NCBI GenBank assembly: GCA_051294905.1
Contig: CM119382.1
Coordinates: forward strand, 5,580,001 to 5,644,000
DNA length: 64,000 nucleotides
DNA from: Botryllus schlosseri
Lineage: Eukaryota
Reading direction: 5' to 3'
The notes beneath the pieces are model-generated. The model had not been told where the DNA came from and ran no database searches. It was given only the letters and a program-made list of their open reading frames with translations. This document shows positions 8,743-47,192 of the stretch, in pieces (the stretch's first letter is position 1; each line of letters begins with the position of its first letter). Position numbers and translations under genes: made by a program.

Positions 8743-11700
8743 TCACGTAGAATTTTGCGTCCTGACCCCCAACGTCGAGTTCACAAGGAGCCTGCGATGC
8801 ATCGCGATCTCTTCCTGGGTCAGGGGCCTGGCGTCGTACGGGCAATGCTGCATTGTCGGCAGTGTGGACTGGTAGGAAGACCGTGCGAATGCTGTAGCAA
8901 AACTTGTTTTAGAATTGCGCCGGCCAAAGTGTGATGCTTTACGGAAACGAATTACCTTTAGTTCGATTTTGTGATGGCGTGGCGTCTTCATCATCACTCA
9001 AGAGCTTCAAACGAAATTCCCTTGTCAATCTCTCTTCAAGGTACTGTTGTTCTTCGTCATCCTAAAAAAGAGATATCGTCTGCGTTCAACATTACCAGTC
9101 ACGATTTCGTCTGCGCATCACGCTGACAGTAGCCTCTTCATTTTCGCAATTCCCATTGAGCGGACAACAGTGGTTCTGCTAAGCCGCAGAACACTTACAC
9201 TAATCTACAAGCATTTGCGAAACCCCAAAAACTGTAATCTGTCCCGAATCCCATCTAACCACACATGTATATATTACTAGAGATTGGTGGTGCACAAAAT
9301 GAACTGTCAATCGTTTCACCATAAATACGCTGTCCGACACTCTCAGACTGCGCGTTAACGGTGCAACACTCTACCATGTATTGACAGTATCGATCGAATT
9401 AGTTGAGCAAAAGCGGTCAATCGTGGATTGTTTGACAGAAGATATCTATGTCACAGTGAATAACACATACTTATTCGCACTAGGTATACGTTGTGGACTC
9501 TATACGGAAGTAACTAAAACATGTACATTTTTACAAGGTTATCTCGTCTTCTTGACTATGTACACACTCGGTTGCCCTGCTCTCGTCTCGCTTCGTGGCG
9601 TAGTTGGTTAGGCGTTGACATTCTGAATCCAACGGTATATTACATGTTGGTTTCGCATCCCATTGAGGTCGTGTTTTACAGTTTTGAAAAGTGAAGTAAA
9701 ATTTTTCGGAAATACCAGCCGGTTATAACCTTGAATACAAATGTAACAGTACCCCGTGCCAAAAACCAATTTCCTATTCCTACGCACTACACCAGGATCG
9801 AATGCCGAACCTTTTTTTCATCCTCTGAATCCGAAGAGCTTTCTTTTTCGTTATCGATATCGGGTACGACTTGCACTTCATTCGGAGAGTACCGATGCAG
9901 CGACCTCGCGGACACACATCGTCTCAGAGCTTGCAGGGTTTCTCCGGACGTCAGACGGGCTGCCGGGTCGAAGGTCAAAAGACCACGGATGATGTCGTTG
10001 ACTTGCGTCGACGTGGTGGAGTTGCTGAAACAGGAGTAGAAAGGGTGATATGTTTGTGAAGTCTTGCGGCCGAATCATGGTTCGAGGGCACCTTTGTAAG
10101 CAAAACTACCTTCTTTTCACACTTGAATGTTTTAACTCGAATGTTTTAAAACGCTTGGCCCGTAGTAAAAACATTGGAGCCTAGGAAACTTAGGCCGCTC
10201 CGTGACTCGTGGCTCGTGATAATGCTACCAATGTTCAATGCAATGATGAGAAATTATAGTCATGGCCTGGACAATTCGCAATTGTCGCTCTTGCACCGCA
10301 AAAGATTTAGGAATGTTTTTTTGATTGCCAGCCCGAGTCTGTGCCGGGCCAATGTTATTCCAGATTGTATCACACAAGCTCCAGGGTTAATTTCCCCACA
10401 ATGAAAATACTACACCATCTTAGCTGACAGTAGATATCATATTGAAATTAATCCAGATCATATGCAAAGACAGGCTGGACCATTGATACACAAGGCAACT
10501 AGGCCACAATTCATTGCGCATCTTTACTATTCATATTTGAGCGCAGAATGGAAAGATCTCCCCGCTGTGCTGTAATATGATCTCCACGTTCTCTCTGAAT
10601 AAGGAACCTCGCTTTGGTAACTAAGGCCAAGATACATCTCTGTCTCTGTTTCTGCTGTTATCATAGTTAAATTGTACTATTACAACTAGGTTTTATACAG
10701 GCAAATGATGAAGTCACCAGCACCATGAGGATTATCTGACAGTTGTAATATCTGCATGACTGCATTTGTGCATACATTTAACCTGATGTGTGATGAATCG
10801 TTAGATCTTCGAACTTGAAACATCATTTTCTGAAGCATTCTCCTATTTTTTAATAAATATACCACTTTTCTTTTTAAATATCCCTTGTTTTTTTCCGGCT
10901 GGCTACACCCCTGTTATATTCATATTGAAATGAACCCGAATATTTCCGGCTGACACTCGTCATTTATCAAAATACGTCAACCAAATATGTGTCTACTGAA
11001 GGATCTCGTGTACCGCGTAAAAATAGTATATTGGAGTTCAAGCGCTCTCTCCGTCCCGACTATTCGAAATTTCATGCAGGTTACGTCATATTTTGCGACA
11101 GGATTATTGATATGCAATGTTCTCTCCCATTCTCTACTAGCTGCTGACGATTACCCCTGACGAGTGTCAGCCGAAAATATTCGGGTTCATTTCAATATGA
11201 ATATCCGACTCAATTGTATATTGCTGTTCTGTACCTCCAAGAAGCAGTTGTAATTGAGAAGAAACATATAGTGTTTCTTCAACTTAAACTGCGACTAGCA
11301 ACACCCATGACTTTGGCCACCTCCCCTTTTTGATTACTAAATACATTCGTATCCCGTCAACAAAGAGTGTGTCATTCTCACCTTGGAATGACAAAGTCTG
11401 CTTTACGAATCTTTTTGAAGAGTTGCATCGGATCCTTGTCGTAAAACGGAAACTGACCGTACAGCATCATAAAAAGCACGACACCGAGTGACCACATGTC
11501 GCTGGGCTTTCCAGCATAAGGTTTTCCTGTCAATAGAATTGAAGATATAGTTTGAGTATAAACATACTGCAGCAAAATCATATGAGCTCGATACCACAAA
11601 AATGTCGAAGCAAAGCATCAGTGATCACATAAGATTATATCAGCAACCAGACACTAAAACCAGATTTGTATGACAGTCCATGGACATATGAGCATGCAAC

Positions 11701-14700
11701 ACTTGGCCATGCAACACTTCAGCATGCAACACTTGGCCATGCAACACTTCAGCATGTAACGCTTCAGCACGCAACACTTGGCCATGCAACACTTCAGCAT
11801 GAAACGCTTCAGCACGCAACACTTGGCCATGCAATAATTCAGCATGCAACACTTTGGGTTGAAGTTTGGGTTGGGTTGCATTTAAGACTAGGCAGTGTTG
11901 TAATGACTCGAGTCACAATTTTTTGTTGACTCGACTTGCCTCGAATCATTTCCTGAAAAAAATGGAGGATGACTCGATTTGAGTCACTTTGTGTATTGAT
12001 TCGACTTGTACTCGAGTCATTGGGCATGACTCGACCAAGTCATGTGACTCGAAACGCTCTATATGACTTGATTCTTATCATGTTTATCGGGGCCGATACT
12101 TGAAAATAGGCCCAGAAAATTTGTTTCATGTGTTCGAATAAACATGTTAAGAGTGAGAAAAATTAGCATATTATGAATGTGAGGCTGTCGATAGCACCCA
12201 AGAGTTTCAAAAAAGTGAGTTGAACATATCTTGAACTCTATAACACAAACTGAACATTATGACTCGGACTCGAGTCTCAAGACGATGACTCGGACTTGAC
12301 CGTTGCTCTGTGACTTGGTTGCAATCCTGGAACTAGGTTATGGTTAATTGTGAGGGTCGTGATCGGGAAAGTTGTGGGTTATAAAGTCATATGCACAAGT
12401 GTTGCATGCTCAAATATCATTTTTATAGTATCGCACGCTCAAATGTTAGGCAAACTCGTTAGACATAGGCATAAAAGTACACCGGTAACATTTCCTCACC
12501 GCTCAAGACATCAGGGCTGATGTAAGCGGGACTTCCGCGTCTGTCTTTCAATAGGTCGTCGTCGGACATCAGATGCCTCCCCAGACAGAAGTTGGTCAAG
12601 ACCACTTTTTGGCTCTTCTCCAACAGAACCATATTCTCTAATTTCAAATCCCTGAAACACAGCGCACGCGTTCAGCTAGACAAGAAACAGATGCGACAAA
12701 TACATACACAATTGAAAGTTACTTGATAGTGGCAAGGAGCGTACAATTGCAGTGCTAGAAAAAATCATGTCGCACTACTTTACTTCCAATTTATTTCCAG
12801 ATTTTTATGTTGTCAAAACAAAGCCACCGACCTATGCACTACATTCAGCGAATGCAGCGAATGCACAATATCCAGGATCAGAGTGAAGATCCGCACCGTC
12901 TCGCGTTCCGCCAAATGCCCCGCCCTCATCACGTGCTTCTGCAGGACCAAACAGTCCCGGGTGGCAGGGTCAAACTCATGCGGCGTCAGGCAGTCCAGAA
13001 CCAGACACACACGCTCCCTAGCCTCGCCAGTGGCTCCATCAAAAGCCACATCTTTGTAAAGACCATGCTCGCGAACCACACCTGAATGATTTTTGAGCAG
13101 AGTCAACAGCGAGTGCTCCGAGTACAGGAGCAAGCGTCCGCTACGGTCGTCATCAGTACGACCTCCCATTAAAAATACTTTTGCCAGATAATACTTGAAC
13201 GTGCCTTCCTTACGGACTAGATACTGAGATATGCTCTTGACCGGGGACGAATCTAATTTGGGGCCGAAAATGAAAGGTCCCATCCTGCGTTTCTCGGTGT
13301 AATCGGCGGGGCACTTCACGATGCAGTCCAGGCGGTCCTGCGAAAAGCCTGGTTTTGTCGGCCATGGTGATACTTTGTCACGCGGGACATTGAATTTAGT
13401 GTCGTCCTTCCAAGCGACTTGCTTTTTCAAAGGCAAAGACTTGACTCTCAACCCCTCGGGGTTCGTCGAACTTTGACGTGTCGACACACTCGCCGAGTCG
13501 GACTTGTTTTGACTTGGGGCTGCTTTCTTGAGTTTGGGGTTTTTCAGGATGGACGGGCTTGGGGTCATTTTCCTTTGTGTCGCAGTGTCAGTGACTTTCA
13601 ATTTATTATGATTGCTTTCTTCTGAAATGAGAATAGAAATTTCTTCAGATCAGGCTACTTCCACTTCTATGTAAAAGCTACTCAGGAAAAACCAACAGGG
13701 CTGTAATGACTCGAGTCACAATTTTTCGTCGCCTCGACTTGTACTCGAGACGTTGCACATGACTCGGTGGTGAATTGAAAATGACTCGAGTCAACATTAT
13801 AAAAGTCAAATTCACTTGCCACTTCGTTACACCCAGGGTTGTAATGACTCGAATCACCTTTTTTGGTGACTCGAGTCATTTTTTGACTCGTAACTAGGAC
13901 GCTCAAGACAGTCATTTCTCCAAAGAATAGTAAAGGTACCACATTATTGGCATGTCGTCTATCAGTCCTGATACTCGGAAAATAGGGCCAGAAACTGTTA
14001 AAACTGAGGAAAAATACGATATTATGAATGCGAGCCATTCTATATCACTCGAGCAGAGTTGAAAAAAAGTGGTTTGAACCAGATTGAACTGAAAACTGAG
14101 CAGCGAACTTGGACTCGGAGTTGACTCGGTGGTGAATTGAAAATGACTCGACACTCGGAACCTTGTAACTCGGTCACAACCCTGCCTCCACTCAACAATT
14201 TTTCGGGCAAAACCACCGCGTAGCAACAAACTATGTCTGCTTTTTGCAATACTCCAGCGCGTCTTACCAAGGTGAACTAGTTACTCGACCAGTGATGCTT
14301 TAGACTGCACCCATTTCCCCTCAAGAGTTTTCGGCTATTTTATGAAAAAGGCATACTTCTACTTACTTGGAAATCTCCAAATACTCGTACTTGAGTAGAT
14401 ATTTATGTTACTCAGACTTCTGCATCTACTTTCACCACCTCTGGTGCTCGTCATGTCCTATCGCCACAATAATAGCAATCACTTTCCCATACCTATCGTG
14501 ACTGATTTCGACGGAGTTTCACTCGGCCTTGCATTGGCGCAACTTTCAATACTACGCGAAGTGCCAGGAACGTCGTCACACCGCGTTTCCGTCTCGTGTG
14601 ATCCCTCGCTTGTTTGAGGCGCCCGTTCTTCCGCGTTATCGGCGTCGCAACGCCGAAATCTGGGCCTACGAAGCTGGTCGGCGGGGCACGGGTATTTCGG

Positions 14701-17700
14701 GTTCAACGGTGTCCCGCCGCATGTCGCGGCTCTCTTTCTCGTCTCTCGAAGCTGTTCCAGAAAGGAGGCGGCGTCTGAAATCCAACAGAAATAGCGTCAG
14801 AGTTGGGACAAATACCGGAACGATTATTTTCAATATTGGCAAATCGAATCCGGCATTGGCAGAAGTAACAAAAGAAATTTGTACTCGTACAGTCAGAGAA
14901 TAATTAAATCATAAGAGACTAAGGTATTCATGTCGAAATAACCCAAATATATACGGCTGACATTCGTCAGGGGTAATCGTCAGCAACTCATAGAGAATTC
15001 GAAAGAACGTTTTATAAATCTACACCAACAATCGTAGGCCTACCACAAAATATGACGTCACTAATCAAATTTGGCGACACGATTGTTGATATACCGAGTT
15101 TTTTTTATTGCTCCACTACTTGCTGACAATTACCCCGGACGAGAATATTTGAGTTTATTTCCATATGAATACATCATTCAATTGTATAATGAAGCTCTGT
15201 ACCTCAAAGAGCCTCTTGAACTATAAGACATAAGTCCCTGCCTTTCGAGTAGGCTAAAAGTACTTCAAATGCAAAGTAGAAGTGAGAATGCGAGTCTTGA
15301 CGTCGGTGTTTTGAAGCAGTTTGAGACAAGGCGCTAATATAATAACGAAGAAAATGGTTCTGATTCCGTGAAATCTACATTGGCGCGACGTAAGATACTT
15401 CCGGATATCGACTATCACCTGGGTATAGATTTTCTTGCATTCTATGTCAGTTTATATGCTCCTCTTGGTCACCGATTTCATTGTGAAAAGTATTATATTA
15501 TTTGTGAATTACATCGCTATCGTTTTAACGAGGCTATTTATAGATGACTGACCTACGGATAGATAGTAGATACGCAACACCCGCCGTCACGCTTGCTTGC
15601 CCAGAGGAAATGACTGCTCAGCAATCTGAACGCAACATATTTGCCAATACCATAGCTGACGACACGAGCGGCGAGCGTTCAAATTCAATAAAGTTGATCT
15701 TATTTGTAAGCTACTGTCGCACTGATTACGAAAATATACATTAAAATCTGATCAGGGCAATGGAACTTCCTCGAAATACACCTGAAAGTCTGAAAATCGG
15801 CATCGTTCTGAACAATCGCAACCACGCAAGGGCCATTGTTATGGTCATTGTGCTGCGTCGCTACGATTGTTGAGAACAATGCCGATTTTCAGACTTTGAA
15901 GGCTATTTCGGGGTGGTTCCATTGCCTAATGAAATTTTAATGTATATTTTCAGAATCAGCGCGACGATAGCTTTCAAATAAGATCAACTTTATTTAATTT
16001 GAGCGCTCGTGTCGTCAGCTATTGTGTTGGCAAATATGTTGTGTTCAGATTGTTGAGCAGTCATTTCCTCTGGGCAAGCAAGCGTGACGACGGGTGTTGC
16101 GTATCTATCCGTAGGTTAGTTATCTATAGGCTATTTCAACGAAGTTTACTAATTTCCGGCCCATCCGCGTCACATTTTTTCCTCAATAATTAGCAATTTC
16201 TTTCTCCAAACTCAATCACACATGAACATGAACAAGAACAGTGAACTGGCTGAAAAAAAACATAATCTCCATTCAAGCATGCCCGGAACATTATGTTTCG
16301 TAATGGCAAAGCAACGAAATTCACCGTCGTAAATGCTATCATTTTAAAAAATGGTCAAGATTCAAATTCTAATTTTCACGGTTTCCACTGGCCGGAATTG
16401 AGCCAAATTTTGAATGCCACGGTTTTTCATTCAACCTAACAATTCACTGACGTATGCAACATGCAAGTGAAATTTCCGAAAGAGTTTTCTTTTTACCGTA
16501 CAATAGGGCTGTTCCAAACTAACTTTTACTAAAAAACCCCACTCAATTCTGACCGTACAATATGAAATTGAAATTACGGTGGGAAATTTCCAATTTCAGA
16601 TTGTACGGCTTCTTATGGTCGAAATTCAGTCAAATTTGGTGCGCTGTGTTTTTACTTACGTAACCTAACAATTTAATCACTATTGTAGCGAAATTTTGAA
16701 AAAACTTTTTTTTTGACATACAATCATGCATCGGAAAGATAAGATCACCAACCGGTAGCGCTGTGAGGGGCGTTGACCGGTGGCGAAGCCTCGAATACGT
16801 CGTCGTCATCATCGTCGACAGAAGAGGAATTTTCCGTGCTTTCTTCCGAAATATGCTGAACCTCCAACGATGTCGGCGTCGAATTCCTGCGGAGCATTGC
16901 AAAATTCCTTGCGACCGGCGCGATCGATGAAAACGGGCCACCGACGCTGTATCGCTCTCTCCTAGATGGAAGATAACAGATAAGCAATTCGTTATTTGCG
17001 TCGCAGCGTCTAGAAACAATTTTGTGACAAAATTGCTGACCACCCACGCAAACCGTATGTCCACATCGCGTCCATCAACTCCTTAACATAGTTCTACCTT
17101 TCCACAGCGCTCCCCACCTCCACTGGTTACTTGTTACATCGGTGATTTTGTAAAGTAAAAGATAGTTTCAGGATGGGCTTGAAGCACTTTTTACGAGTGA
17201 AATTGTCATGAAAACTTGGCGGTGGGGCCCCTGAATCCCCGCAAATTATTGTACTTGCACCAAATTGTAGCAGGGTTGTAGCCTAATCACAAGGTTCCGA
17301 GTCACAAGTCAATCTCACTCTTATAGTTTTGACTCGAGTCAAGTCGAGTCATTTTCAATTCACCGCCGAGTCAAGCCGGGATCCAACTCAGTGAGTAGAG
17401 GGTTGAGTCCGAGCCATAGTGCTGTGACTTGAGTCCGAGTTCAAGTCATTGTGTTCACTGTTCAGTTTTGAGTTCAGGTTCAACCCACTTTTATCAACTC
17501 TGCTCGAGTGATATAGAATGGTTTACATTCATAATATCGTAATTTTCCTCATTTCCAACAGTTTCTGGCCCTATTTTCCAAGCATCAGGGCTGATAGACG
17601 AAATACTAATAATGCGGTGACTTTACTATTCTTCGAAGTTACAATGAAATATCTGTCTCGGCCATCCTGGTCTCGAGTCATATGACTTGGTTACGCATTT

Positions 17701-20700
17701 GAAAAAATGACTCGAGAGTCAAGAAGAGTCACCAAAAATCGCGACTCGAGTTGAGTCATGACTCGAGTCATTTCAACGCTGATTTGTAGTCTCGTTGGTC
17801 ATTTTGTGTTAGTCGCAAAGATGCACTAAAATTTTGATAGTGTCCACTCCCAATTAACTGGTTAAGGTATACGACCGAAGTAGTTTTGGCTTGCCTTTGC
17901 TACTTCTACTTGTAATTGAGTTGAAATTTACCAACTTCTTCTGCTTTAGTAACAGCAAAGCTGACTAGTTTCAGTATCTCTAGTTGTCTTTCTGATACGA
18001 TTCAGAGATCAGCATGGATTCGGACCAGAATTATGATTTCAAAGCTGGAATTCGACAATAATTTATATCTATTCTCAAATTTTATGCAAATCTCAGTAAT
18101 TCACAAATTCGAACTTCGGCAAGATATCGTCGCTAGAAAACCAAACCGTCTTATGTCCACTTTTGGTATTTTTGAATGTTCTTCTTCTATCACTATTTGG
18201 ACATGGCCATAGATCTATCTTTTTAACTGGGTTCCATGTTCTTTAAGTAGCATGAATTTCTAGTGAAATGGACATATGGAACTCGAATTTTCAAGGTAAA
18301 TTGAAAACCAAACTGGTTTGTGTCCAAATTATATATTAAAATTGCCCAAAATAGATAGAAAACTGTTTGGTTTTCCAGTGACGATATGGCGCCGTGATAA
18401 ATAACTTTTACTGTAGCTAACGGAATGTCCACATAATTACTGCTGACATTGCTGACAACAGTTTCTCGGCTCACCAGTAGCCTATATCGATAGAAAATTT
18501 CTCACAGCGACTTCTTAAGGGGTTAAATTATTTACGGCTAAAGAATCCTCGGGCAGAATCATAGCTACAAAACCGACAAGATAGCGTGGTGGTGGAGTGC
18601 CCGGCTTCTTGGTCGGTAGGTCGTGTGTTCAATCCCCGGCCGGGTCAGACCATAGACATGATATGATTAGTAACGCCGGTACCATGACTTCACCACTTGG
18701 AGCTCAGCATTACCGGATAGCATGGAGGGGTTGTGCAAGACATAGAAAGTCTTACAAGGATATATCTGCAGATCTGCACCTTCCTTGTCATGTGCACATC
18801 GTGCACTCATGGTATGCTTGTGTGAATTTATATCATGAGGCGCAAAAAATATCAAGAACACAAATACATAACAACCTTTCCTTTTCGAATAGGCCTATAG
18901 GCAGTTGCCTGCTATTGAGAAGACGATCGAAGCAAACATTTCTATCTCTCTGACAAAATACAGATCCGCAAATGGCGTAAAACAACATCTCATACTGGAT
19001 TTCCAGTTATAGGATACATAACAATGTTTCTTAACCAGGGTTCACACGAATCCCAGAAGTTCGCTGGAAGTCAAGACACACAACCTACTCTTAGAGCAGA
19101 GCTCACATCAATTGGTGTGTAGTAAATATTCATTATCATCTTTTTGTTTTGTGTGAAAATCATATTTAAATGGTTTTCTTAGTTTAACACCGTTGTTGAT
19201 GCACAGTTCAATACATTCTATAGCAATGTGTTAAATGTGTGATGTGATAGATTTCTGTTTTACGATTAGCCAGAAATTTGGAATTAGCCACGTTACTAAA
19301 CGTTAAGTACCCCTAGGATACGTACCTGGCCGCGGTGTGATTCGCAATCATCTGATGATACATATTATTCCTGGCCACCCCGTCAGAGTCTGTAACAGTT
19401 GGGTAAGGTGGCGGCGGTCGTTCGTAATGCGGGGGCGCATTGCCAACACCGGGTGGTCTATGACTCGTGCTGGAAGCGCCCTCCTGAGGTAGTGAGGTGT
19501 TTGTAGAATTTCGGCGGAATGAAGCGGATTCGTTCACTAAATTTGATTGAAACTTTCGAACGTAGTACGGATAATGAGCATTGCTCGCGATAGGGTAATG
19601 AAGTCCGAGAGCCCCGCTTTGGTGCATCTGAAAACAGATCACAAAGTTGCTCCATGTTCAATTGTTCATATATAGCTGTACCTAAACGATAGGGTTGTTC
19701 AAAAATAACTTTTTGTATAATAATTTGGCTCGATTCCAACTGGTAGATGTGAACGCACAGGAGTTTGAAAATTTTGAATCCATTATATAAATTTTTTTTT
19801 TTAATTTAAAATGTTACAGTCAACCCCTTGAAATTGTTCAGTTGTCTACAAAAACGATTTGAGTTTTCCATTCATAATTCTGGGATTAGCCTACCTACCG
19901 TCCAGGCTATTTTTGCGAATCCAAAACTTTCAACTGCAATAACTTCGCTTCTACCGGTTGGAAGTGAGCAAAAATTGGTAAGCACCGTTCTTTCACACAA
20001 CTTGACGGTTGACAGTAAAATTTGATGAAAAAATTTTTCAATTTTTTAAAATAAATTCAAAATTTTCAGACTCCTGTGCGTTCACACCTATCAGTTGGGA
20101 TTGAGCCATATTTAGTGCGCAGTGTGTTTTTACGCAACCTAACAATTCAGTCAGTGAATCCACGGAATCCAGAAAGAAGTTATTTTCGAACAACCCTACT
20201 GTATAAAGAAAGAGCTACCAAGCTAGAAAAGGAGATCTGCATGCTGGATGTTGTAATACCGAGACTCAAGACACCTCAAAACCACTGATAAATAGTTTTG
20301 AATTGTCAAACATAGACAATGGACATGCTGCTTCAGGTTGCGAAATGACCAGGGTAGTTGTTTGAAGAACTGCCAACGATCCACTAATCCAAAACTCATT
20401 CATGTTCGATTTGAAGTGGTTCGTCTTCTAAAGAAATCAATGAAGACTGACTTCCTGAGCAACCAAGTAGGTTACGCAAATACATGTGCTAGTTGCCTGG
20501 ACTGAACATACCGTACGTGTTTTCTTTACGTGAAGTGGCCATAAAAATGCAATCTGCAATTGATGGATTCGATGCGATAATAATCAAATTAATTACTTTT
20601 TGTAACCTTTGTTCACCAGAAATTAAACTGTGGAACCCTAAATAGTTCAGAAGACACTCATGCAGGTACAGAACTTCAGTTAAAAATTGAATAATATAAT

Positions 20701-21331
20701 TATAACGAAATAAACAAAAATTTTGACTAAGCAACTAGCAAAGAACTGAGAAGAATATTGTGCATCAACTTCAACACTCATATCACCATTACCCCTTAAA
20801 ATATTCCGGGATAAATTCAATATGAATATATCATGAAATAGTGCAAGGCTGTTATCAAGTTAGACCTTTCCGAGGGGCAGAGATACACGAATACTCTCGG
20901 CATAATAAAGATCATACCTCTAAAACGGATGAATGGGAAGCGGCCCTGCTTCTGCTGTTGCAATTATTGTTATCATTGGAGCTCAGGAGGAGAACGGGGT
21001 TTATCTGATTTAAACCGGTCAAGGCGGGTCGGTATCCGCTTTGGAGCTGCAAGCCGGGATGCATCCGCGGGATCAAGTACGGTCTCTGCATTGACGAATA
21101 CAACACCGGGTCGAAAAGCAGTCCTTGAATATTGCGGCCATACGGCGGGAACAAAGAAGTGTTCGGAAACTTTGTAGCATTGTGGGGTGAGTTCACGGAC
21201 TGCGCCGTACAATGGAATGCCGCCGGTAGTTGCGGTCTAGCCTGTGCTCGATTCTCTGAAGTCTGGGCTCCGTCGATATCGTTTCTCGAAGAACCATCCG
21301 CAAAACTTCCTCTCATCGTTCGGTTATCCAT
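8743..21331 (-). CDS. STK40: Serine/threonine kinase 40 (Tribbles-related pseudokinase) with long N-terminal extension
   Basis: Exons 21331-20918, 19627-19326, 16961-16753, 14774-14493, 13621-12832, 12651-12500, 11526-11382, 10024-9811, 9061-8956 and 8891-8743 join in frame with GT-AG boundaries (2763 nt, 920 aa). STK40 hallmarks: KRRMGPFIFGPKLDSSPV, HRDLKLENM, TNFCLGRHL, RGSPAYISPDVLSGKPY, QVVPDID, YDARPLT. The kinase exons are high confidence; joining the first four exons is less certain. Confidence 0.85.
10916..11250. mobile_element. PLE remnant with inverted terminal repeat
   Basis: Minus-strand partial repeat 10916-10962 abuts a plus-strand copy that begins with a degenerate end of the GIY-YIG ORF (FIKIRQPNMC..VYRVKIV vs FIKIHQPKLC..VYHLKIV) and continues through the 3' repeat. 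Confidence 0.8.
11143..11186 (+). ncRNA. Putative minimal type I hammerhead ribozyme in a PLE terminal repeat
   Basis: accc-CTGACGA-gtgtcagcc-GAAA-atat-TC-gggt: complete core, 4-bp stem I, and a 1-bp stem III with a palindromic tetraloop. Upstream GCTGAC is complementary to GTCAGC in loop II. Confidence 0.65.
11692..11856. repeat. 15-bp minisatellite (CATGCAACACTTGGC / CATGCAACACTTCAG), ~11 units
   Basis: Direct reading; lies in an STK40 intron. Confidence 0.95.
11893..12329. mobile_element. hAT-type GACTCGAGTC MITE
   Basis: Same family; flanks agactagg / gaactagg (6/8). Confidence 0.8.
13697..14184. mobile_element. hAT-type GACTCGAGTC MITE with duplicated left end
   Basis: Two CAGGG(C/T)TGTAATGACTCGA starts (~13697, ~13833) and an end at CACAACCCTG. 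Confidence 0.75.
14925..15235. mobile_element. PLE remnant, inverted pair of terminal repeats
   Basis: Minus copy ~14925-15062 and plus copy ~15055-15235, both homologous to 51894-52060. Confidence 0.7.
15540..16127. mobile_element. 588-bp fully palindromic non-autonomous DNA element with 9-bp TSD (Mutator/foldback-like)
   Basis: Arms pair almost to the centre; perfect AGGCTATTT duplication (15531-15539, 16128-16136). Confidence 0.88.
17271..17781. mobile_element. hAT-type GACTCGAGTC MITE
   Basis: Same family; flanks aattgtag / atttgtag (7/8). Confidence 0.85.
18573..18740 (+). mobile_element. tRNA-derived SINE, diverged copy
   Basis: gatagcgtggtggt..ggtaggtcgtgtgttcaatccccggccgggtcagaccatagac..gctcagcattaccggatagcatggagg. 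Confidence 0.7.
19690..20198. mobile_element. TAGGG-terminus MITE family copy
   Basis: TAGGGTTGTTCAAAAATAAC...TTTTCGAACAACCCTA; internal homology to 34073-34716. Confidence 0.75.
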
Positions 21332-22399: not shown

Positions 22400-22966
22400 T
22401 TATTTCGCAGGTATCATGCTCTGAAGCTGTTCCGACAACCATGATATCCCATCCTGAAGTCCTTCACCAGTTTTAGCGTTACTCGCGCAGATATGCCACG
22501 CTTTGTTTTTGATGTTATCCAAGCCTAGCAGCTGCGAGCACTTTACAGCTGACAAGGAGTCGGGCAGGTCCATTTTATTGGCGTAAAACAAAATAGGAAT
22601 CTTTCTACCGCTAATGTCCGAATGGTTCAAAAGCTGCGAGAGTTCGTCTTTAGCTACGGCGATGCGTAATTTATCGGCGCTGTCGACGACGAAAATGATA
22701 GCGTGCGCTTCCTTGTAATAATGTTCCCACAAGGTACGGTACCGTCCTTGCCCAGACATGTCAAACACTGTAAACGCGAGGCTCTGCGATTGAAATTTTT
22801 CTACGCTAAAGCCAACAGTCGGGACGATATCCTGTTTTTGAGAATCTTTCGGCCGCAAAAAGTTTATAACAGTGCTTTTTCCGCTGTTATCTAGTCCCAC
22901 ACATAGGATGCCTGCTTCCTTCTTCTTGTTGCCAAATAGTTTCCTCAACGAGTCGAAAAGTCCCAT
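22400..22966 (-). CDS. ARL6: ADP-ribosylation factor-like protein 6 (BBS3), intronless CDS
   Basis: 188-aa ORF with MGLFDSL N-terminus, GLDNSGKS P-loop, [27 protein letters not shown] and CASNA. Confidence 0.95.
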
Positions 22967-36500: not shown

Positions 36501-39500
36501 TCCTGCACTAGTTTCCAGGTCAACATTTTGAATTGCACATCAAAAATATGAATCAAGTTTCCCTAGCAGTTAAATTACTGAGACAAGATATAAATTTATA
36601 TCCCACACAGTCATTTAAATCAAGCCATATTTCTTAATATAATGTACTTTGACTACTACCCTTTGGTTTAGTCTTAGAAAACATTGAATTTTGAGGTCTA
36701 ATTGTTATGATTCCCGACTTATCAATAAAAACATCTGTAATAAATTATCCACGGCAGCATAAGGGGCGATAAGAACAATGTTGAATCGTATGAACTGGAT
36801 AACATTATTCGGATATCCGCAGTTTCAAAATCCGAAAATAGAATTCGAATTATTGACCAACGCATAAAAAGTGCCACATCAGCCACGCAGCCCACAACCG
36901 AACTCTGATAACCCAAAAGTGCCGCATAAACTGAAGCCACGCTAGCGGATAACCTTAGAGATCAGAATTTTTAAAACAAGCACAATGACCAAGTGCGTCA
37001 GTCAAATTAATGTGGCATGTTAACCGGATATAGTTTTTTGAAAATCGCACCTAGTTGCAGCATCATGGGCAGTTTCCATTAGTCTCAAAGACGCACTCCT
37101 GTATTTCTAAATCTAGCAACCTACATTTGACTGCCAAGACTGTACGACCCACCGACCAAATCAATTTTATAAACTACCGTACTCTAGTACTTCTGTCCCT
37201 GTAATTTCTATCATTGAAATTGCAAGATACATTTTCGTGACTAGCGCAAAACGACCAACACCGACTACACATAGGTACAATCTTCAAAAACACTAAGTAT
37301 TCCACAAATGATAGGACTGCGTAAAAAACTAAAGATTCCGTCACCGTAATAAGGTTTCATGGACAACTATAAAATTATCAAGATTTGACAAATTAGATTA
37401 GATTTAGAAATCCTGTATTTGCAAAAACTTGGAAATTGATTTATATTCTGAATTAGCAATAAATCTCGCAAAGAACAACGTCAGTTCGTATCAAGTTAGA
37501 GTTCCAATCCCTGTACACCAGGCTAGTTTCGCACTACTGTTTTCAGGAAAACCAGAAATTGATTAGAATTATAATTAGAGCATAGAAACATTTCACAAAT
37601 AATGGATTAAAATTTGAATTAAAGCAAACTAGATTACCAGCATTTCGTTTAACTTGTCCAAGTTTAAAATACACGAGTGTACATTATACAAGAAAAAAAA
37701 CTTACCCGTAATGAACCAGAAACCGGACCAGCTCCGCGTGCCCCGCGCAGACCGCGTTATGCAACGCCGTGATACCTTCGTCGTTGGCCCCGCTCGGGTC
37801 CGGCACCCTGTCTATGATATCCCTCACCAGTTCAAACTCCCCTTCCAAGGACGCGTCCAGCAGAAGTGCCAGCGGGTCAAAACGAATTCGTATCCCCTTC
37901 GGAATAAACCCGGGTTTTTTCAAGTTACTTTTCGTCGGGACTTTGTCGAAAGGCAGCTGGGGCACGACTATGGTCGGACCCGTCCCGGAAGAAACGTCGG
38001 AAGCGGCGTCAAAATCCGCCGGGACCCGCGGCGGTTCCTCCGGGGCAGGCTGTTCTTGCATGCGGCTGAAAGCCTCCGTGATTTTACGCAGGTTTTTCTG
38101 CTGCGACGCAGACGCGTAATCGGCCGTGGACGAAGTCACCGGGGCCGGCGGCGGGGGCCCGGATTTAACATCGGCGGGCGGGACGTACGCTGGCGGCGGG
38201 ACGTCCGGATGCGCCGCGGCTGGGGCCTGATCGCCACCGGGCCTGTAAAACGGAGTGTCCGCTTGTTTATATATCTGCTCGTATATAGACTTTGGTATGG
38301 CGGGGCCTTGCGGACGCTCCTGCTCCGTTATAGAGCTGCGCTTTTTCAAAGGCCTGGGGGCGTGCGCGAATTTCCGCCTCACCGCCTCAAAAGTAGACGA
38401 TTCTCCGGACCTGGACCCGTTCGGGTAAGGCGGCGGGGGGTGCCCAGCCGGAGGCTGCGTGTACCTAATATTCCCGTCCGGCAGGACAGTGACATTGGAT
38501 GGTAAATACGATGGTGTTTTCGGTGCTGGTGGTTGCTTGTATGCGAACAAATTAATGCCGCTGTTCGGTTGCGCGGCGGGGCTACCATTACCCGGGACCA
38601 TCGGTCTAACCGTCGCTTTCGGACTTTCCCCGGGCAGCTGCGATTTCTTTTCAAAAGCGGCCCGGTTGGCCGCGAAATTACTCCCTTGCAGATTATCGCT
38701 ACTCGCGGACTTTGCGAGCGCCGGTTTTTGATTAGCGGCCGTGTCTGGGGCACTGTACGTGTTCTGCCGGGGATACCCGGGTCTGTGCGTGCCTTCCGGC
38801 GCGGGCCTGTGCTTCATGTGTAAAGCGTCGTATTCCTCACGGGCCTTTCTCTCCGTGGCTTGCTTTAAAGGTTCCACCGCGGCCACTATAGTGTGCATGG
38901 GCGTCGAGGGCGCGGCGTACTGCTGCGCTTGAGACTGCCCGCTCGTATTATACTGGTCCTCTGGCAGTCCCGCCACTGCCTTCTTCTTTTTTAACCTATC
39001 GTTCAGATCCTCAATCTGCCTGTCCAAGTCTCTTGCGTCCTCGTTCCGTTTCTTTAACGCGTTACGTTGTTCGTCGAGCCGTCTCTGCTGTTCGTTATTC
39101 ATCAAGTTCAGAAAGTCGAGTTCCTTTTTTAGTTTCTCCAGCTCCGAGCCGGTCTCGGGGGCCTTGTCGACGCCCTGGTTCTGTCGGTCGTCCTGGGCCG
39201 GGGCGGCGCCAAGCTTGTGGTTTTTCAGCTGCTCTAGCTGCTTGGTGAGGTCGTCTACTTTGGTGATGGCACGCGTCAGTTCGTTTTGTTTCTCTTCGAA
39301 CAGCGTGCGGACGGCTTCCAGTTCCACGGACAGCGTGGTGTTGTCGTTTCTGCGAAATGAGAGACCCGTCACTTTCATCACGACAAAAAATTCCGCGCCA
39401 CCCGATTACAAGTAAAAGAAGCGATTTCCGAGAAAAGTCAAAGCTACTTCCAAGTAGAGAATAGAGAACTGAAAAGCACTCAAGAAACCAGTTTTCAGAA

Positions 39501-42500
39501 GTAGATTAGGTCGAGACGTCCCATACTTTTGGTAGTCGATCGAAAGCATATAGTTACTGCGCAAAGGGGGCTTTTTCGCTCCGTCGTTACAAGAGAGCAT
39601 TCAAAGTCTAAAAAGCACGTAGTTTCGCCCAAAAAAACTGCAGAAGTGGAAACAGTTGGGGAGCATAACCACTCAAGTAGTGCGAGAGAGAATAACCTAC
39701 TCAAGTACTCGGCAGGGTTGTGATGACGAGTCATGACTCGATTCGAGTCGATTACATGGTGACTCGAGTCAATTTTTGTATTGACTCGACTTGTACTCGA
39801 GTCATTGTGCATGACTCGAACCAAGTCATATGACTAGAGACTAGGACAGTCAAGACAGACATTTCATTGTAACTTCGAAGAATAGTAAAGTCACCACAAT
39901 ATTGGTATTTCGCCTATCAGTACTGGTACTTGGAAAATAGAGCCAGAAACTGTTGAGACTGAGGTATGAATGCGTGCCATTTTATATCACTCGAGCAGAG
40001 TTGAAAACAGTGGGTTGAACCGAATTGAACTGAACAGTGAACAGGATGACTCAGACTCGAGTCAAAACACTATGACTCGGACTCGACCCTCTACTCACTG
40101 ACTTGGACTCGGTGGTGAATTGAAAATGACTAAACTTGACTAGAGTCAAAACTATAAAAGTGAGATTGACTCAGAACGTTGTGACTTGGTTACACATTCA
40201 AAATCGACCACGACTTATATAACATGAAAATTCTGTGATCCATCTCGCGAGATTTCAAAACAGATTCATCGTACGACCAGCTACTGCCAGAGCGAGCCTA
40301 CCTTCTCTGATCCAGCTTCCCTCTCATTGCCCGGATTTTTTTCAGCTTGGCTTCCTGCGCCTCGGCCTTCTCCCGGAGACGTTTCAAACGGTCGTTCTCG
40401 CCCAGCAGGGCCTGCTGCTGTTGGGCCTGCTGCCGCAGGAAACGCAACCTCTGTTCTTTGCCGACGAGCGACTGCTGCTGACGTTCGATTTGAATCTGCT
40501 GCTGATGCGCTAAATCCTGCGGGCAAGACAGAGTTCAGTACGAATTTGGGTTTGTAATCTCGTGGCTTGTGCGATTTCGAGAATCCGACGACGGACGGGC
40601 ACTTGATTTTGTTGTACTGAACTAGGCACCACAATAATTTTACACGCACTTTACTGCAATACTTTGTAGTATGTGGCATTTTGAATATCCGACAATTCAC
40701 ACTCACTTGTTTTGTGGAACTCGGCTGCCCCACTATCATTTTACTTGAGCAATCATTTTACAGTAACAGTTTGTAATGTGTGCTGTTTTGAATATCCGAC
40801 AACTGACCGGCAGTGGTTGCTATACTCAACTAGGCGCCATATTGAGATTACTCTTCAAACAATCATTCTAAAGGAACATTTCGTAGTATAAGCCACTTTG
40901 AATATATCCAAAAACTGAAGACTATTGTTTTTGTTGTTATCTGGTTGTTTTTGTTGACGGGCAAGTTCTAGTTCTAGTTGCAGTTTTGAAAATTAGTTTG
41001 CCGATCAACTAAAAAACATGTGTCGTCATTTGGTGCGAATCGCGATACCGGGGTTCTGTTGCGAGATGTACTTGCAGTCATTGCTAGCTCAGAGACGTCA
41101 CTATAGTGACACAGCTAGGGGGTGCATTTTGGGGTCGGAACACCTCCCCTTTCGCACTCAAAACGCCGCCGTTTTGAAATGCCGTTTATATCTTCAATAT
41201 TTTCTGATCTCATTTGCTATTCGGTAAGTCGTATTTATTAGTAATTGGTTGTGTTTTAGTTTGCTAGCTGCGGATTCTCAAAGGTTATTAGTTCTAGATT
41301 GAGAGCATCGAAAACTGAGTAGCTCCAGTTTTACCTCTAGTTGTGCATTTTGAAAATCCAATAGTTTGTTCACGTCTGTTGACGGCACAATTATTTGACA
41401 GCAATAGTTTGTAATATGTGCAGTTTCGAATACCGAACAACTGACAAGCAATTGTTCTTGCTGTAATCAACCATCAACCTCACCACGAGTATTTTACAAT
41501 AATTTCACAGTAATAACGGCGACCAGACTAGTGTTTGTTTATTTTATCATCAACAGCCAACACATATATCGAATATGAAACTCATTCACACGATGAACAG
41601 AAGACATTTCAGTTACCTTGAGCTCTGCCAGAGACAGGTTCCCTTGATTTACGTTCAACATTGATTGTTCGTTATTCCAGTTGCTGGAGCGATCCATCAG
41701 TGCGCCCGCGCTGCCTGCAATGTGGCGGAGGTAGAACTGGACTTCTGGGGCGTACGACCCCCATTGTTGCAAAATTGTGTAGGGTTTTTCACCTGAACAG
41801 TTGATCTCACGTTAGGATTGGTCACCCCATGAAATTACTCAAAGAAAGAGTGGCCCATATAGAACAAAATATACTGATCAAGTCGGGCATATTTTTCATA
41901 AACATTAAGCAACTTATCAGTCTCGGTCATAAATTGACATATAGCCCATTTACGAGTTCTTCAAATTTACGAAAATTATGGTGGACTATCAGCATTAGGA
42001 ATTCGATAATTCAATAGGACTAGACAGTTGACTGGTCAAGTGGTAGAAAAGTCACAGCATGACAACGCAAACTAACATCTCCCGGCGATAAGTGCGTAAC
42101 ACTCGCAACGCAAATAGTGCCCGATTAATGACAAATAAAGGACAACTGAGAAATATCAATCGAATAAGAGATGTACATGATTTAATTACAACATATCACA
42201 GCAAGGTAACTTCATGGCACGACTCATGACATTGTCAAAGACAATTCAATTTCAATGACACACAAAAATAACTACTATAAGAGGTAGGTATTGTTGTGAA
42301 ATGACGGATAGAACCCGAGGAGTCTTACATCAAACAATCTGAGGAAAGAAATATGCGGTTTGATCAAAAACTCAATTCATCTGCAGTAATCGCTGATTTC
42401 GGTCATCATTTCAATCGATTTACATAACCCTGACGAAATGATGCATCTTGGAACATCAAATGAAGCATTACCCTATTTAGCACAAAAATAATATATATAA

Positions 42501-46019: not shown

Positions 46020-47192
<1,173 letters not shown>

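What the first reader, a model, noticed from the sequence alone, without database searches (positions are those of the whole stretch)
13290..21331. STK40 with a ~500-residue disordered N-terminal extension carrying PPxY, 14-3-3-like and Akt-like motifs
Seen: four extra upstream exons join the kinase exon with matching phases at all four junctions (0, 2, 1, 1), placing the kinase-homologous region at about residue 513 of 920. The extension contains ERPPPPYP, RRNSTN, RRNSTP and RKRAATC. Established: human STK40 is ~435 aa with a short N-terminus; PPxY binds WW domains (YAP, NEDD4-family ligases); RxRxxT is the Akt consensus; the C-terminal VPD COP1-binding motif is retained here. Inference: a pseudokinase adaptor that could couple COP1 to WW-domain partners and phospho-control.
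Basis: partly seen in the sequence, partly recalled or inferred. Interest (0 to 1): 0.7.

Follow-up and report, generated by a model that had tools for sequence, protein, structure and literature searches.

The report
Sea-squirt STK40 with long N-terminal tail
This is the single STK40 pseudokinase gene of a sea squirt, and it really does encode about 510 extra, probably unstructured residues in front of the kinase-like domain; other sea squirts have the same extension, so it is a correct gene model of a family already present in databases, not a new kind of protein.

Summary
Ten minus-strand exons (21331-8743), all with GT-AG introns and the stated phases (0, 2, 1, 1), give a 920-aa protein. 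STK40 homology starts near residue 512.

The protein is 69% identical from first to last residue to a 914-aa uninterrupted ORF on a 3.2-kb contig from a related species. It is collinear with two more such contigs and with the NCBI gene models of Styela clava (954 aa) and Clavelina lepadiformis (848 aa). In this species, one spliced contig joins exon 2 to exon 3 exactly as modelled. Junctions 1-2, 3-4 and 4-5 were not seen directly, and two raw RNA runs had no reads on the exons.

The extension has no Pfam domain, a disorder-type composition and almost no predicted secondary structure. The COP1 motif QVVPD and the STK40 pseudokinase hallmarks are present.

Long N-termini are common in invertebrate STK40, but this sequence is found only in tunicates. 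WW, 14-3-3 and Akt-type binding remain inference. The scan has no earlier record of this on other DNA. Modest interest.

The parts
20918..21331 (-). Exon 1, residues 1-138. The start ATG at 21331 sits in GCCATGG, with an in-frame stop 8 codons upstream. It holds the conserved island LNQINPV..SSNDNNNCN..RSRAASHS. The RxRxxS site RSRAAS lies at 20953-20936.
   Evidence: It is 64% identical to P0151 residues 1-134, which also start MD. It is single copy.
19326..19627 (-). Exon 2, residues 139-239, phase 0 in and phase 2 out. It holds RRNST (19516-19502), PPHY (19435-19424) and PPPY (19414-19403).
   Evidence: The donor at 19326 is confirmed by spliced contig X1 record 4. The RRNST and PPPY islands are conserved.
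16753..16961 (-). Exon 3, residues 239-309. It holds RRERYSVGG, RRNSTP (16891-16874, a 14-3-3 mode-I-like RxxSxP) and DDDDVF.
   Evidence: The acceptor at 16961 comes from the joint 16960/19325 with ends CT..AC. Contigs of X3 end exactly at 16753. Homologues lack the 16 residues that the alternative acceptor at 17009 would add.
14493..14774 (-). Exon 4, residues 309-403, phase 1 at both ends (282 nt). It holds the predicted helix motif FLEQLRETRKRAAT, with RKRAAT at 14739-14722, and RPRFRR.
   Evidence: It has counterparts in all five tunicate homologues, and RKR plus S/T at +3 is kept in 6 of 6. It is single copy. No RNA contig or read covered it.
12832..13621 (-). Exon 5, residues 403-666. 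It carries the last 110 residues of the extension (TPSPSILK, KKQVAWKD) and then the N-lobe of the STK40 pseudokinase from about residue 512. The internal ATG at 13568 is not conserved as Met in the homologues.
   Evidence: A contig of X3 ends at the acceptor (13519-13619).
12500..12651 (-). Exon 6. It holds the catalytic-loop remnant HRDLKLEN (the HR comes from exon 5) and TNFCL in place of DFG.
   Evidence: Hallmarks are taken from the table in PMC7586955.
11382..11526 (-). Exon 7, C-lobe (GKPYAGKPSDMWSLGVV...).
9811..10024 (-). Exon 8, the end of the C-lobe and the COP1-type VP motif QVVPD (9873-9859).
   Evidence: Q-V-V-P-D is invariant in the tunicate set.
8956..9061 (-). Exon 9, an acidic tail and the helix LTREFRLKLLSDDED.
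8743..8891 (-). Exon 10, the C-terminal motif ...CPYDARPLTQEEIAMHRRLL..., ending at the stop codon.
   Evidence: The DA(R/Q)PLTxxE..H(R)xLL motif is shared with STK40 of echinoderms, molluscs, crustaceans and insects; shorter unnamed proteins keep only a partial DAQP form.

Best explanation
This is the single-copy STK40 (SgK495) orthologue of an ascidian. It has ten exons over 12.6 kb and encodes 920 aa.

Residues ~512-810 are the STK40 pseudokinase domain. QVVPD at 816-820 is the COP1-docking VP motif, and a conserved DARPLT tail follows it. [quoted passage not shown] This function is inferred from family membership.

Residues 1-~511 are a tunicate-specific N-terminal region that is probably intrinsically disordered. 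It evolves fast except for about fifteen short islands. The islands include two RxRxx(S/T) sites, two RRNS(T) sites (one in an RxxSxP setting), a tandem PPxY, an acidic DDDDVF patch and a short predicted helix, LEQLRE-RKR.

The most likely role of this region is as a docking and regulatory arm. Basophilic kinases would phosphorylate the RRxS and RxRxxS sites. 14-3-3 would bind at least the RRNS(I/T)P site. The PPxY pair would recruit a WW-domain protein, such as a NEDD4-type ligase or YAP. Together these would control the adaptor's stability, location or substrate choice.

Shown here: the gene structure, the family membership, and the presence and conservation of the motifs. Inferred: the disorder, every binding event and every phosphorylation.
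For: Gene structure:
- All nine introns are GT-AG and the phases are compatible, giving a 2763-nt ORF.
- The model is 69% identical over 900 aligned residues, Met1 to the last exon, to P0151. P0151 is a 914-aa uninterrupted ORF on the 3175-nt Logan contig SRR32906212_13246, with an in-frame stop upstream of its ATG.
- Two more uninterrupted ORFs exist, of 957 aa (SRR32906208) and 904 aa (SRR32906200).
- NCBI models of Styela clava LOC120337384 (954 aa) and Clavelina lepadiformis STK40 (848 aa) have the same layout.
- In this species a contig splices 19326 to 16961, and contig ends fall at the E3 donor (16753) and within two bases of the E5 acceptor (13619).

Family membership:
- The only PDB hit is STK40 5L2Q, E = 4e-35.
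- The nearest named proteins are STK40.
- HRDLKLEN, TNFCL and the degraded glycine loop match the STK40 hallmarks in PMC7586955.
- The gene is single copy.

Extension:
- No Pfam domain is found in it.
- 75% of its residues are disorder-promoting, against 58% in the kinase part.
- AlphaFold predicts coil for residues 1-490 of P0151 except one helix at 298-307.

Function of the family: STK40 is a COP1 adaptor for c-Jun, C/EBPbeta and FOXO1/4 (PMC12808801; PMC11578171).
Against: - In this species only the E2-E3 junction was seen.
- E4 had zero depth in all four runs laid, and E1 was outside the 6-kb stretch.
- Two raw RNA-seq runs gave no read on any exon, so expression is low or restricted.
- The AlphaFold model is poor overall (mean pLDDT 39, five-sequence alignment), so low confidence in the N-terminus is weak evidence of disorder.
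- PPxY and RSRAAS are missing in Clavelina.
- The motif consensus sequences are short and occur often by chance. For example, about 0.6 RxRxx[ST] matches are expected in 513 residues of this composition (my estimate from the residue frequencies).
- Whether this genome has COP1 was not checked.
Confidence: 0.85

Rival explanations
1. There are two products. E1-E4 make a separate mRNA, or are not expressed, and the real STK40 starts at the 13621 acceptor and uses ATG 13568. This start could be created by spliced-leader trans-splicing, which ascidians use. The result would be a protein of about 500 aa with a short N-terminus.
For: No read or contig joined E4 to E5 or E3 to E4 in this species. A contig of X3 stops at the E5 acceptor. 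Reading past the E4 donor meets a stop after four codons, so an E1-E4 product is formally possible.
Against: Three related species have single uninterrupted ORFs that run from the E1 counterpart to the E10 counterpart, and two annotated genomes agree. The Met at 13568 is Ser, Ala, Leu or Thr in the homologues, so that start is not conserved. The phases of E3, E4 and E5 are kept compatible.
Confidence: 0.05
2. The extension is real, but E4 is a cassette exon. Because it is phase 1 at both ends and 282 nt long, skipping it keeps the frame. That would yield an 826-aa isoform without the LEQLRE-RKRAAT helix and the RPRFRR patch.
For: E4 had depth 0 in both contig runs, which did cover E2, E3 and E5 at depth 1-10. 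The exon is symmetric.
Against: Coverage was so thin that a gap is expected by chance. E4 is present in all three transcript-derived ORFs and both gene models, and it carries the only motif invariant in all six species.
Confidence: 0.12
3. The motifs are incidental. The N-terminus would be a spacer or low-complexity region. Its conserved islands would serve something other than WW, 14-3-3 or Akt-type binding, for example nuclear import through RKR and RPRFRR, or an intramolecular contact with the pseudokinase.
For: RKR and RPRFRR look like basic nuclear-localisation patches. PPxY is not universal.
Against: RR-x-S is invariant at two sites, and R-K-R-x-x-(S/T) is kept together with its S/T in 6 of 6 species. 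That is unexpected if only the basic residues mattered.
Confidence: 0.3

Closest known systems
Human STK40 / SgK495 (435 aa; pseudokinase domain structure 5L2Q)
   Same: It is the only solved structure matched (E = 4e-35). Shared features are the HRDLKLxN loop, TNFCL in place of DFG, a degraded glycine loop, a C-terminal QxVP(D/E) COP1 motif, and a DA(R/Q)P... tail that vertebrate-length proteins keep in partial form.
   Different: The pseudokinase domain of the human protein begins at about residue 35 (PMC7586955). Here about 511 residues precede it. That stretch has no Pfam domain and gave no lead in the ESM Atlas.
Predicted STK40 orthologues of other tunicates: Styela clava LOC120337384 (954 aa), Clavelina lepadiformis STK40 (848 aa), and three transcript-derived ORFs (914, 957 and 904 aa)
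   Same: They have the same architecture and the same order of conserved islands in the extension. Overall identity is 38-69%.
   Different: The species differs and linker lengths vary. Clavelina lacks PPxY and RSRAAS. None of these proteins has been studied, and no paper combines STK40 with ascidians.
Long-N-terminus STK40 of other invertebrates (Dreissena 882 aa, Mactra 850, Saccostrea 837, Antedon 777, Macrobrachium 1140, Penaeus 1404, Elysia 1059)
   Same: The pseudokinase domain starts 200-750 residues from the N-terminus, and most of the proteins checked keep the VP motif and the DARPLT tail.
   Different: Their N-termini show no detectable similarity to the tunicate extension. An HMM of the extension hits tunicate sequences only, and they lack its motif set.
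Tribbles pseudokinases (TRIB1-3)
   Same: They have the same logic: a disordered N-terminal region, a dead kinase domain and a C-terminal COP1-binding tail, and they act as substrate adaptors for COP1 (PMC7586955).
   Different: They form a separate subfamily, about 20% identical to STK40, with SLE in place of DFG. Their N-terminal PEST regions are short. The window protein carries the STK40 hallmarks, not the TRIB ones.

Membership tests
STK40 (SgK495) pseudokinase | The pseudokinase domain is closest to STK40 among solved structures and named proteins. | tested here: met
   5L2Q is the only PDB hit, E = 4e-35. The nearest named proteins are annotated STK40.
STK40 (SgK495) pseudokinase | The catalytic loop is HRDLKLxN and the DFG motif is replaced by TNFCL (table in PMC7586955). 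| tested here: met
   HRDLKLEN and LTNFCLG are present in the model and invariant in six tunicate sequences.
STK40 (SgK495) pseudokinase | The glycine-rich loop is degraded to G-x-S-x-x-P (human GNSPVP). | tested here: met
   The window has L-D-S-S-P-V-K. The S and P positions are kept and the first G is replaced by D. The other tunicates have GTSPV(K/R). The loop is therefore non-canonical, as in STK40.
STK40 (SgK495) pseudokinase | A C-terminal VP motif binds the COP1 WD40 domain. | tested here: met
   The motif QVVPD lies at 816-820 and is invariant in the tunicate set. The binding itself was not testable with these tools.
STK40 (SgK495) pseudokinase | No ATP binding and no catalysis. | not testable with these tools
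   This is only inferred from the degraded loop and the missing DFG.
WW-domain ligands (PPxY class) | A PPxY core lies in an accessible region and is conserved in orthologues. | tested here: inconclusive
   PPHY lies at 203-206 and PPPY at 210-213. The second motif is kept in four of six species. P0004 has PPxY elsewhere and Clavelina has none. Accessibility is supported only by predicted coil.
14-3-3 mode-I clients | An R-x-x-pS-x-P motif is phosphorylated in vivo. | tested here: inconclusive
   RRNSTP lies at 263-268. RRNS(I/T)P is present in five of six species, and Clavelina has KRQSSE. Phosphorylation and binding are not testable here.
Akt/SGK/RSK-type basophilic kinase substrates | An R-x-R-x-x-S/T consensus is conserved with its phospho-acceptor. 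| tested here: met
   RSRAAS (127-132) is present in five of six species and RKRAAT (321-326) in six of six with S/T kept. Meeting the consensus does not show phosphorylation, and the kinase is unknown.

The most novel reading that the evidence does not exclude
The tunicate-specific N-terminal arm would be a working signalling hub. It would put the COP1 adaptor STK40 under basophilic-kinase and 14-3-3 control and tie it through its tandem PPxY to a WW-domain partner, such as a NEDD4-type ligase or YAP. Long N-terminal regulatory arms would then be the ancestral state of bilaterian STK40, cut down to about 35 residues in vertebrates.
Probability: 0.2. Interest if true: 0.5.

Novelty: new member of a known kind. 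Interest (0 to 1): 0.3.

Why it matters
Mammalian STK40 is a little-studied COP1 adaptor acting on c-Jun, C/EBPbeta and FOXO1/4, and how it is regulated is unknown (PMC7586955). Invertebrate orthologues carry long N-terminal arms that the literature I could search does not discuss.

In ascidians that arm keeps a compact set of phospho-site-like and PPxY motifs. These could be mutated in an experimentally tractable chordate to ask how a pseudokinase adaptor is switched.

For this window the practical result is a verified 10-exon gene model.

Tried and rejected
- **E3 acceptor.** I first placed it at 17009, which is in frame but 16 codons longer. I rejected that site: the spliced contig uses 16961 and the homologues lack those residues.
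- **Raw RNA reads.** Runs X13 and X15 laid only on intronic repeats and not on any exon. This is uninformative about splicing.
- **Search with E4 alone for own-species fragments.** Nothing was found. The tool's length window makes this blank meaningless.
- **Profile search with the five-sequence alignment.** It found no further tunicate orthologues and otherwise mostly unrelated kinases.
- **HMM of the extension against 150 STK40-like proteins.** Only tunicate sequences matched. I therefore dropped the idea that the extension is homologous across phyla.
- **ESM Atlas with residues 55-345 of P0151.** No usable hit.
- **AlphaFold on P0151.** Mean pLDDT was 39, too poor for a fold search, so I used only its secondary-structure pattern.
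- **Co-transcription with the upstream Arf-like gene.** The 2.9 kb ahead of the ORF on contig L005 has no Arf-like sequence.
- **Second STK40 copy in the genome.** None was found.
- **Complex prediction.** I sent no job. A PPxY-WW or phospho-dependent 14-3-3 docking would not discriminate biological partners, and COP1 of this genome was not in hand.
Full report
**What is there**

The finding lies on the minus strand of an animal genome of 495.5 Mb in 219 contigs; the window is contig C12:5580001-5644000. I translated the region, read the splice sites and assembled a ten-exon model.

| Exon | Coordinates |
|---|---|
| E1 | 21331-20918 |
| E2 | 19627-19326 |
| E3 | 16961-16753 |
| E4 | 14774-14493 |
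| E5 | 13621-12832 |
| E6 | 12651-12500 |
| E7 | 11526-11382 |
| E8 | 10024-9811 |
| E9 | 9061-8956 |
| E10 | 8891-8743 |

- All nine introns are GT..AG, and the acceptors follow pyrimidine tracts.
- The ATG at 21331 sits in GCCATGG with an in-frame stop eight codons upstream.

**Is the upstream part really part of the STK40 protein?**

A full-library HMMER search with E5 alone returned long proteins as nearest relatives, with the match beginning 340-450 residues in: P0002 (957 aa), P0003 (954), P0004 (904) and P0006 (848).

Their sequences, and that of P0151 (914 aa), contain counterparts of E1, E2, E3, E4 and E5 in the same order. They also contain the C-terminal exons.

- tblastn of P0151 against the window recovers every exon, from Met1 at 21331 to the last codon at 8746.
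- The global alignment gives 69% identity over 900 aligned residues.
- P0151, P0002 and P0004 are uninterrupted ORFs on Logan contigs of 3175, 6409 and 3026 nt, from SRR32906212, SRR32906208 and SRR32906200.
- Two of these contigs have in-frame stops ahead of the ATG.
- The same coding sequence is split by nine introns over 12.6 kb here, so those contigs must be spliced mRNA.
- P0003 is the NCBI model LOC120337384 of Styela clava.
- P0006 is annotated STK40 of Clavelina lepadiformis.

Both named species are ascidians, so the window is from a sea squirt. Earlier notes of the scan on other parts of this genome reached the same conclusion.

**Evidence from this species itself**

I placed it on 13480-19479 with two contig runs and two raw RNA runs.

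- Contig X1 record 4 joins 19326 to 16961. The skipped stretch has ends CT..AC, which is GT..AG on the minus strand. This is exactly the E2-E3 junction of the model.
- The same joint rules out the in-frame acceptor at 17009 that I had first considered.
- Two X3 contigs end exactly at 16753, the E3 donor, with 11 further unplaced letters.
- One X3 contig (13519-13619) ends within two bases of the E5 acceptor at 13621.
- E4 had zero depth in all four runs.
- The raw runs, of which 6% and 13% were read, put reads only on intronic repeats.

So in this species one of the four upstream junctions is seen directly and two more exon ends fit. E3-E4, E4-E5 and E1-E2 rest on cross-species evidence. A search for own-species protein fragments of E4 found nothing, but the tool's length window makes that blank uninformative.

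**Family membership**

- E5 matches Pfam Pkinase only weakly on its own. The full orthologues match it at 1e-34 or better, and nothing else matches.
- The only solved structure matched is STK40 5L2Q (E = 4e-35), beginning at E5 residue 110, which is residue 512 of the protein.
- The review PMC7586955 lists the STK40 hallmarks: glycine loop GNSPVP, catalytic loop HRDLKLGN, and TNFCL in place of DFG.
- The window has DSSPVK, HRDLKLEN and TNFCL.
- The tail after QVVPD carries a DARPLTQEE..HRRLL motif. A local HMM finds it again in STK40 of a crinoid, starfish, bivalves, shrimps and a cockroach, and in partial form (DAQP...) in shorter unnamed proteins. The C-terminal exons are therefore ordinary STK40, not a second extension.
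- The pseudokinase N-lobe is single copy in the genome.

**Nature of the extension**

- There is no Pfam domain in E1-E4 or in the first 500 residues of the orthologues.
- Its composition is 75% disorder-promoting and 22% order-promoting residues, against 58% and 38% in the kinase part.
- AlphaFold on P0151 with the five-sequence alignment predicted coil for residues 1-490 apart from one helix at 298-307, the FLEQLRESRKR motif. Normal kinase secondary structure follows.
- That model is poor overall (mean pLDDT 39), so this is consistent with disorder but not proof.
- Identity to P0151 is 42-77% across E1-E4 and the pre-kinase linker, against 85% in the kinase domain.
- 82 of 513 positions are identical in five species, and they cluster in short islands: LNQINPV, SSNDNNNCN, RAASHS, RRNST, PPPYP, RRNS, DDDDVF, LEQLRE, RKRA, RFRR, TPSPSILK and KKQVAWKD.

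RR-x-S at site 1, (K/R)R-x-S at site 2, DDDVF and RKR with an S/T three residues on are kept in all six sequences, including distant Clavelina. RSRAAS and PPxY are missing in Clavelina.

**How unusual is it?**

It is less unusual than the comparison with human STK40 suggests. Among the relatives found with E5, the pseudokinase match starts well inside the protein in many invertebrates.

| Species | Residue at which the pseudokinase match starts |
|---|---|
| Dreissena | 448 (in P0010, a Logan protein of its cluster) |
| Mactra | 415 |
| Saccostrea | 415 |
| Antedon | 376 |
| Macrobrachium | 457 |
| Halocaridina | 424 |
| Elysia | 599 |
| Penaeus | 745 |
| Diadema | 304 |
| Patiria | 211 |
| Platypus | 29 |

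An HMM of the tunicate extension hits none of the non-tunicate proteins, and they lack its motif set. A long N-terminal region is thus a common invertebrate trait, but this sequence is restricted to tunicates. I found no paper that mentions STK40 in ascidians or discusses an N-terminal extension of STK40.

**Mechanism**

Established for mammals: STK40 is a catalytically dead scaffold. It binds COP1 through its C-terminal VP motif and promotes degradation of c-Jun, C/EBPbeta and FOXO1/4.

By membership, the ascidian protein most likely does the same. I read the N-terminal arm as a disordered docking and regulatory region. It offers basophilic-kinase sites, at least one 14-3-3-type site (RRNS(I/T)P) and a tandem PPxY for a WW-domain partner. 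All of this is inference from conserved consensus motifs, and nothing here tests binding.

**Alternatives**

- A separate upstream gene with a short STK40 starting at ATG 13568. This is unlikely, because that Met is not conserved and three species have one continuous mRNA.
- E4 as a skippable symmetric exon. This remains possible and was not excluded.
- Conserved islands that serve other roles, such as nuclear import through RKR and RPRFRR.

**Verdict**

The functional reading is plausible but untested. The object is a new member of a known kind, already present as unstudied predicted proteins in other tunicates.

Noticed in passing
window 22400-22966 (-): An intronless 188-aa ORF of the Arf family (Pfam Arf, E = 9e-52) lies 1.07 kb upstream of the STK40 start on the same strand. 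The 2.9 kb upstream of the STK40 ORF on a related species' transcript contig (L005) holds no such sequence, so there is no sign of co-transcription.
   Followed up: partly
window 46434-46826 (-): This is an exon of another protein kinase (..[30 protein letters not shown]..). From memory it looks like casein kinase 2 alpha. It appeared as a weak side hit of the tblastn.
   Followed up: no
window 38371-38781 (-), within the GC-rich block 38001-40000 (GC 0.54): A proline-rich coding-looking stretch containing HPPPPYP gave a weak match of about 27-29% identity to the PPxY part of the STK40 extension. This is probably compositional similarity in an unrelated gene.
   Followed up: no
window 13680-14280, 14880-15080, 15480-16280, 17280-17880: These intronic repeats have very high word depth in the contig runs (up to about 45,000). 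They drew all the raw RNA reads that were laid. They include inverted copies 13918-14074 / 17482-17638 (157 nt, 86%), which flank exons 3 and 4, and a foldback at 15567-16107 with 104-nt arms at 95%. They look like MITE-like elements.
   Followed up: partly
window 11691-11854: A 15/30/45-nt tandem repeat (consensus AGCATGCAACACTTC, about 11 copies) lies in intron 6 of the STK40 gene. It creates spurious repetitive ORFs on both strands.
   Followed up: partly
window 11143-11186: The Penelope-like hammerhead ribozyme noted earlier by the scan (s1-236790) lies inside intron 7 of this gene, between exons 7 and 8.
   Followed up: no
L006 1-238: The reading frame of the 904-aa orthologue P0004 stays open upstream of its called start and contains another Met. 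That protein may therefore be longer at the N-terminus than called, which would explain its apparent lack of the first ~57 residues.
   Followed up: no
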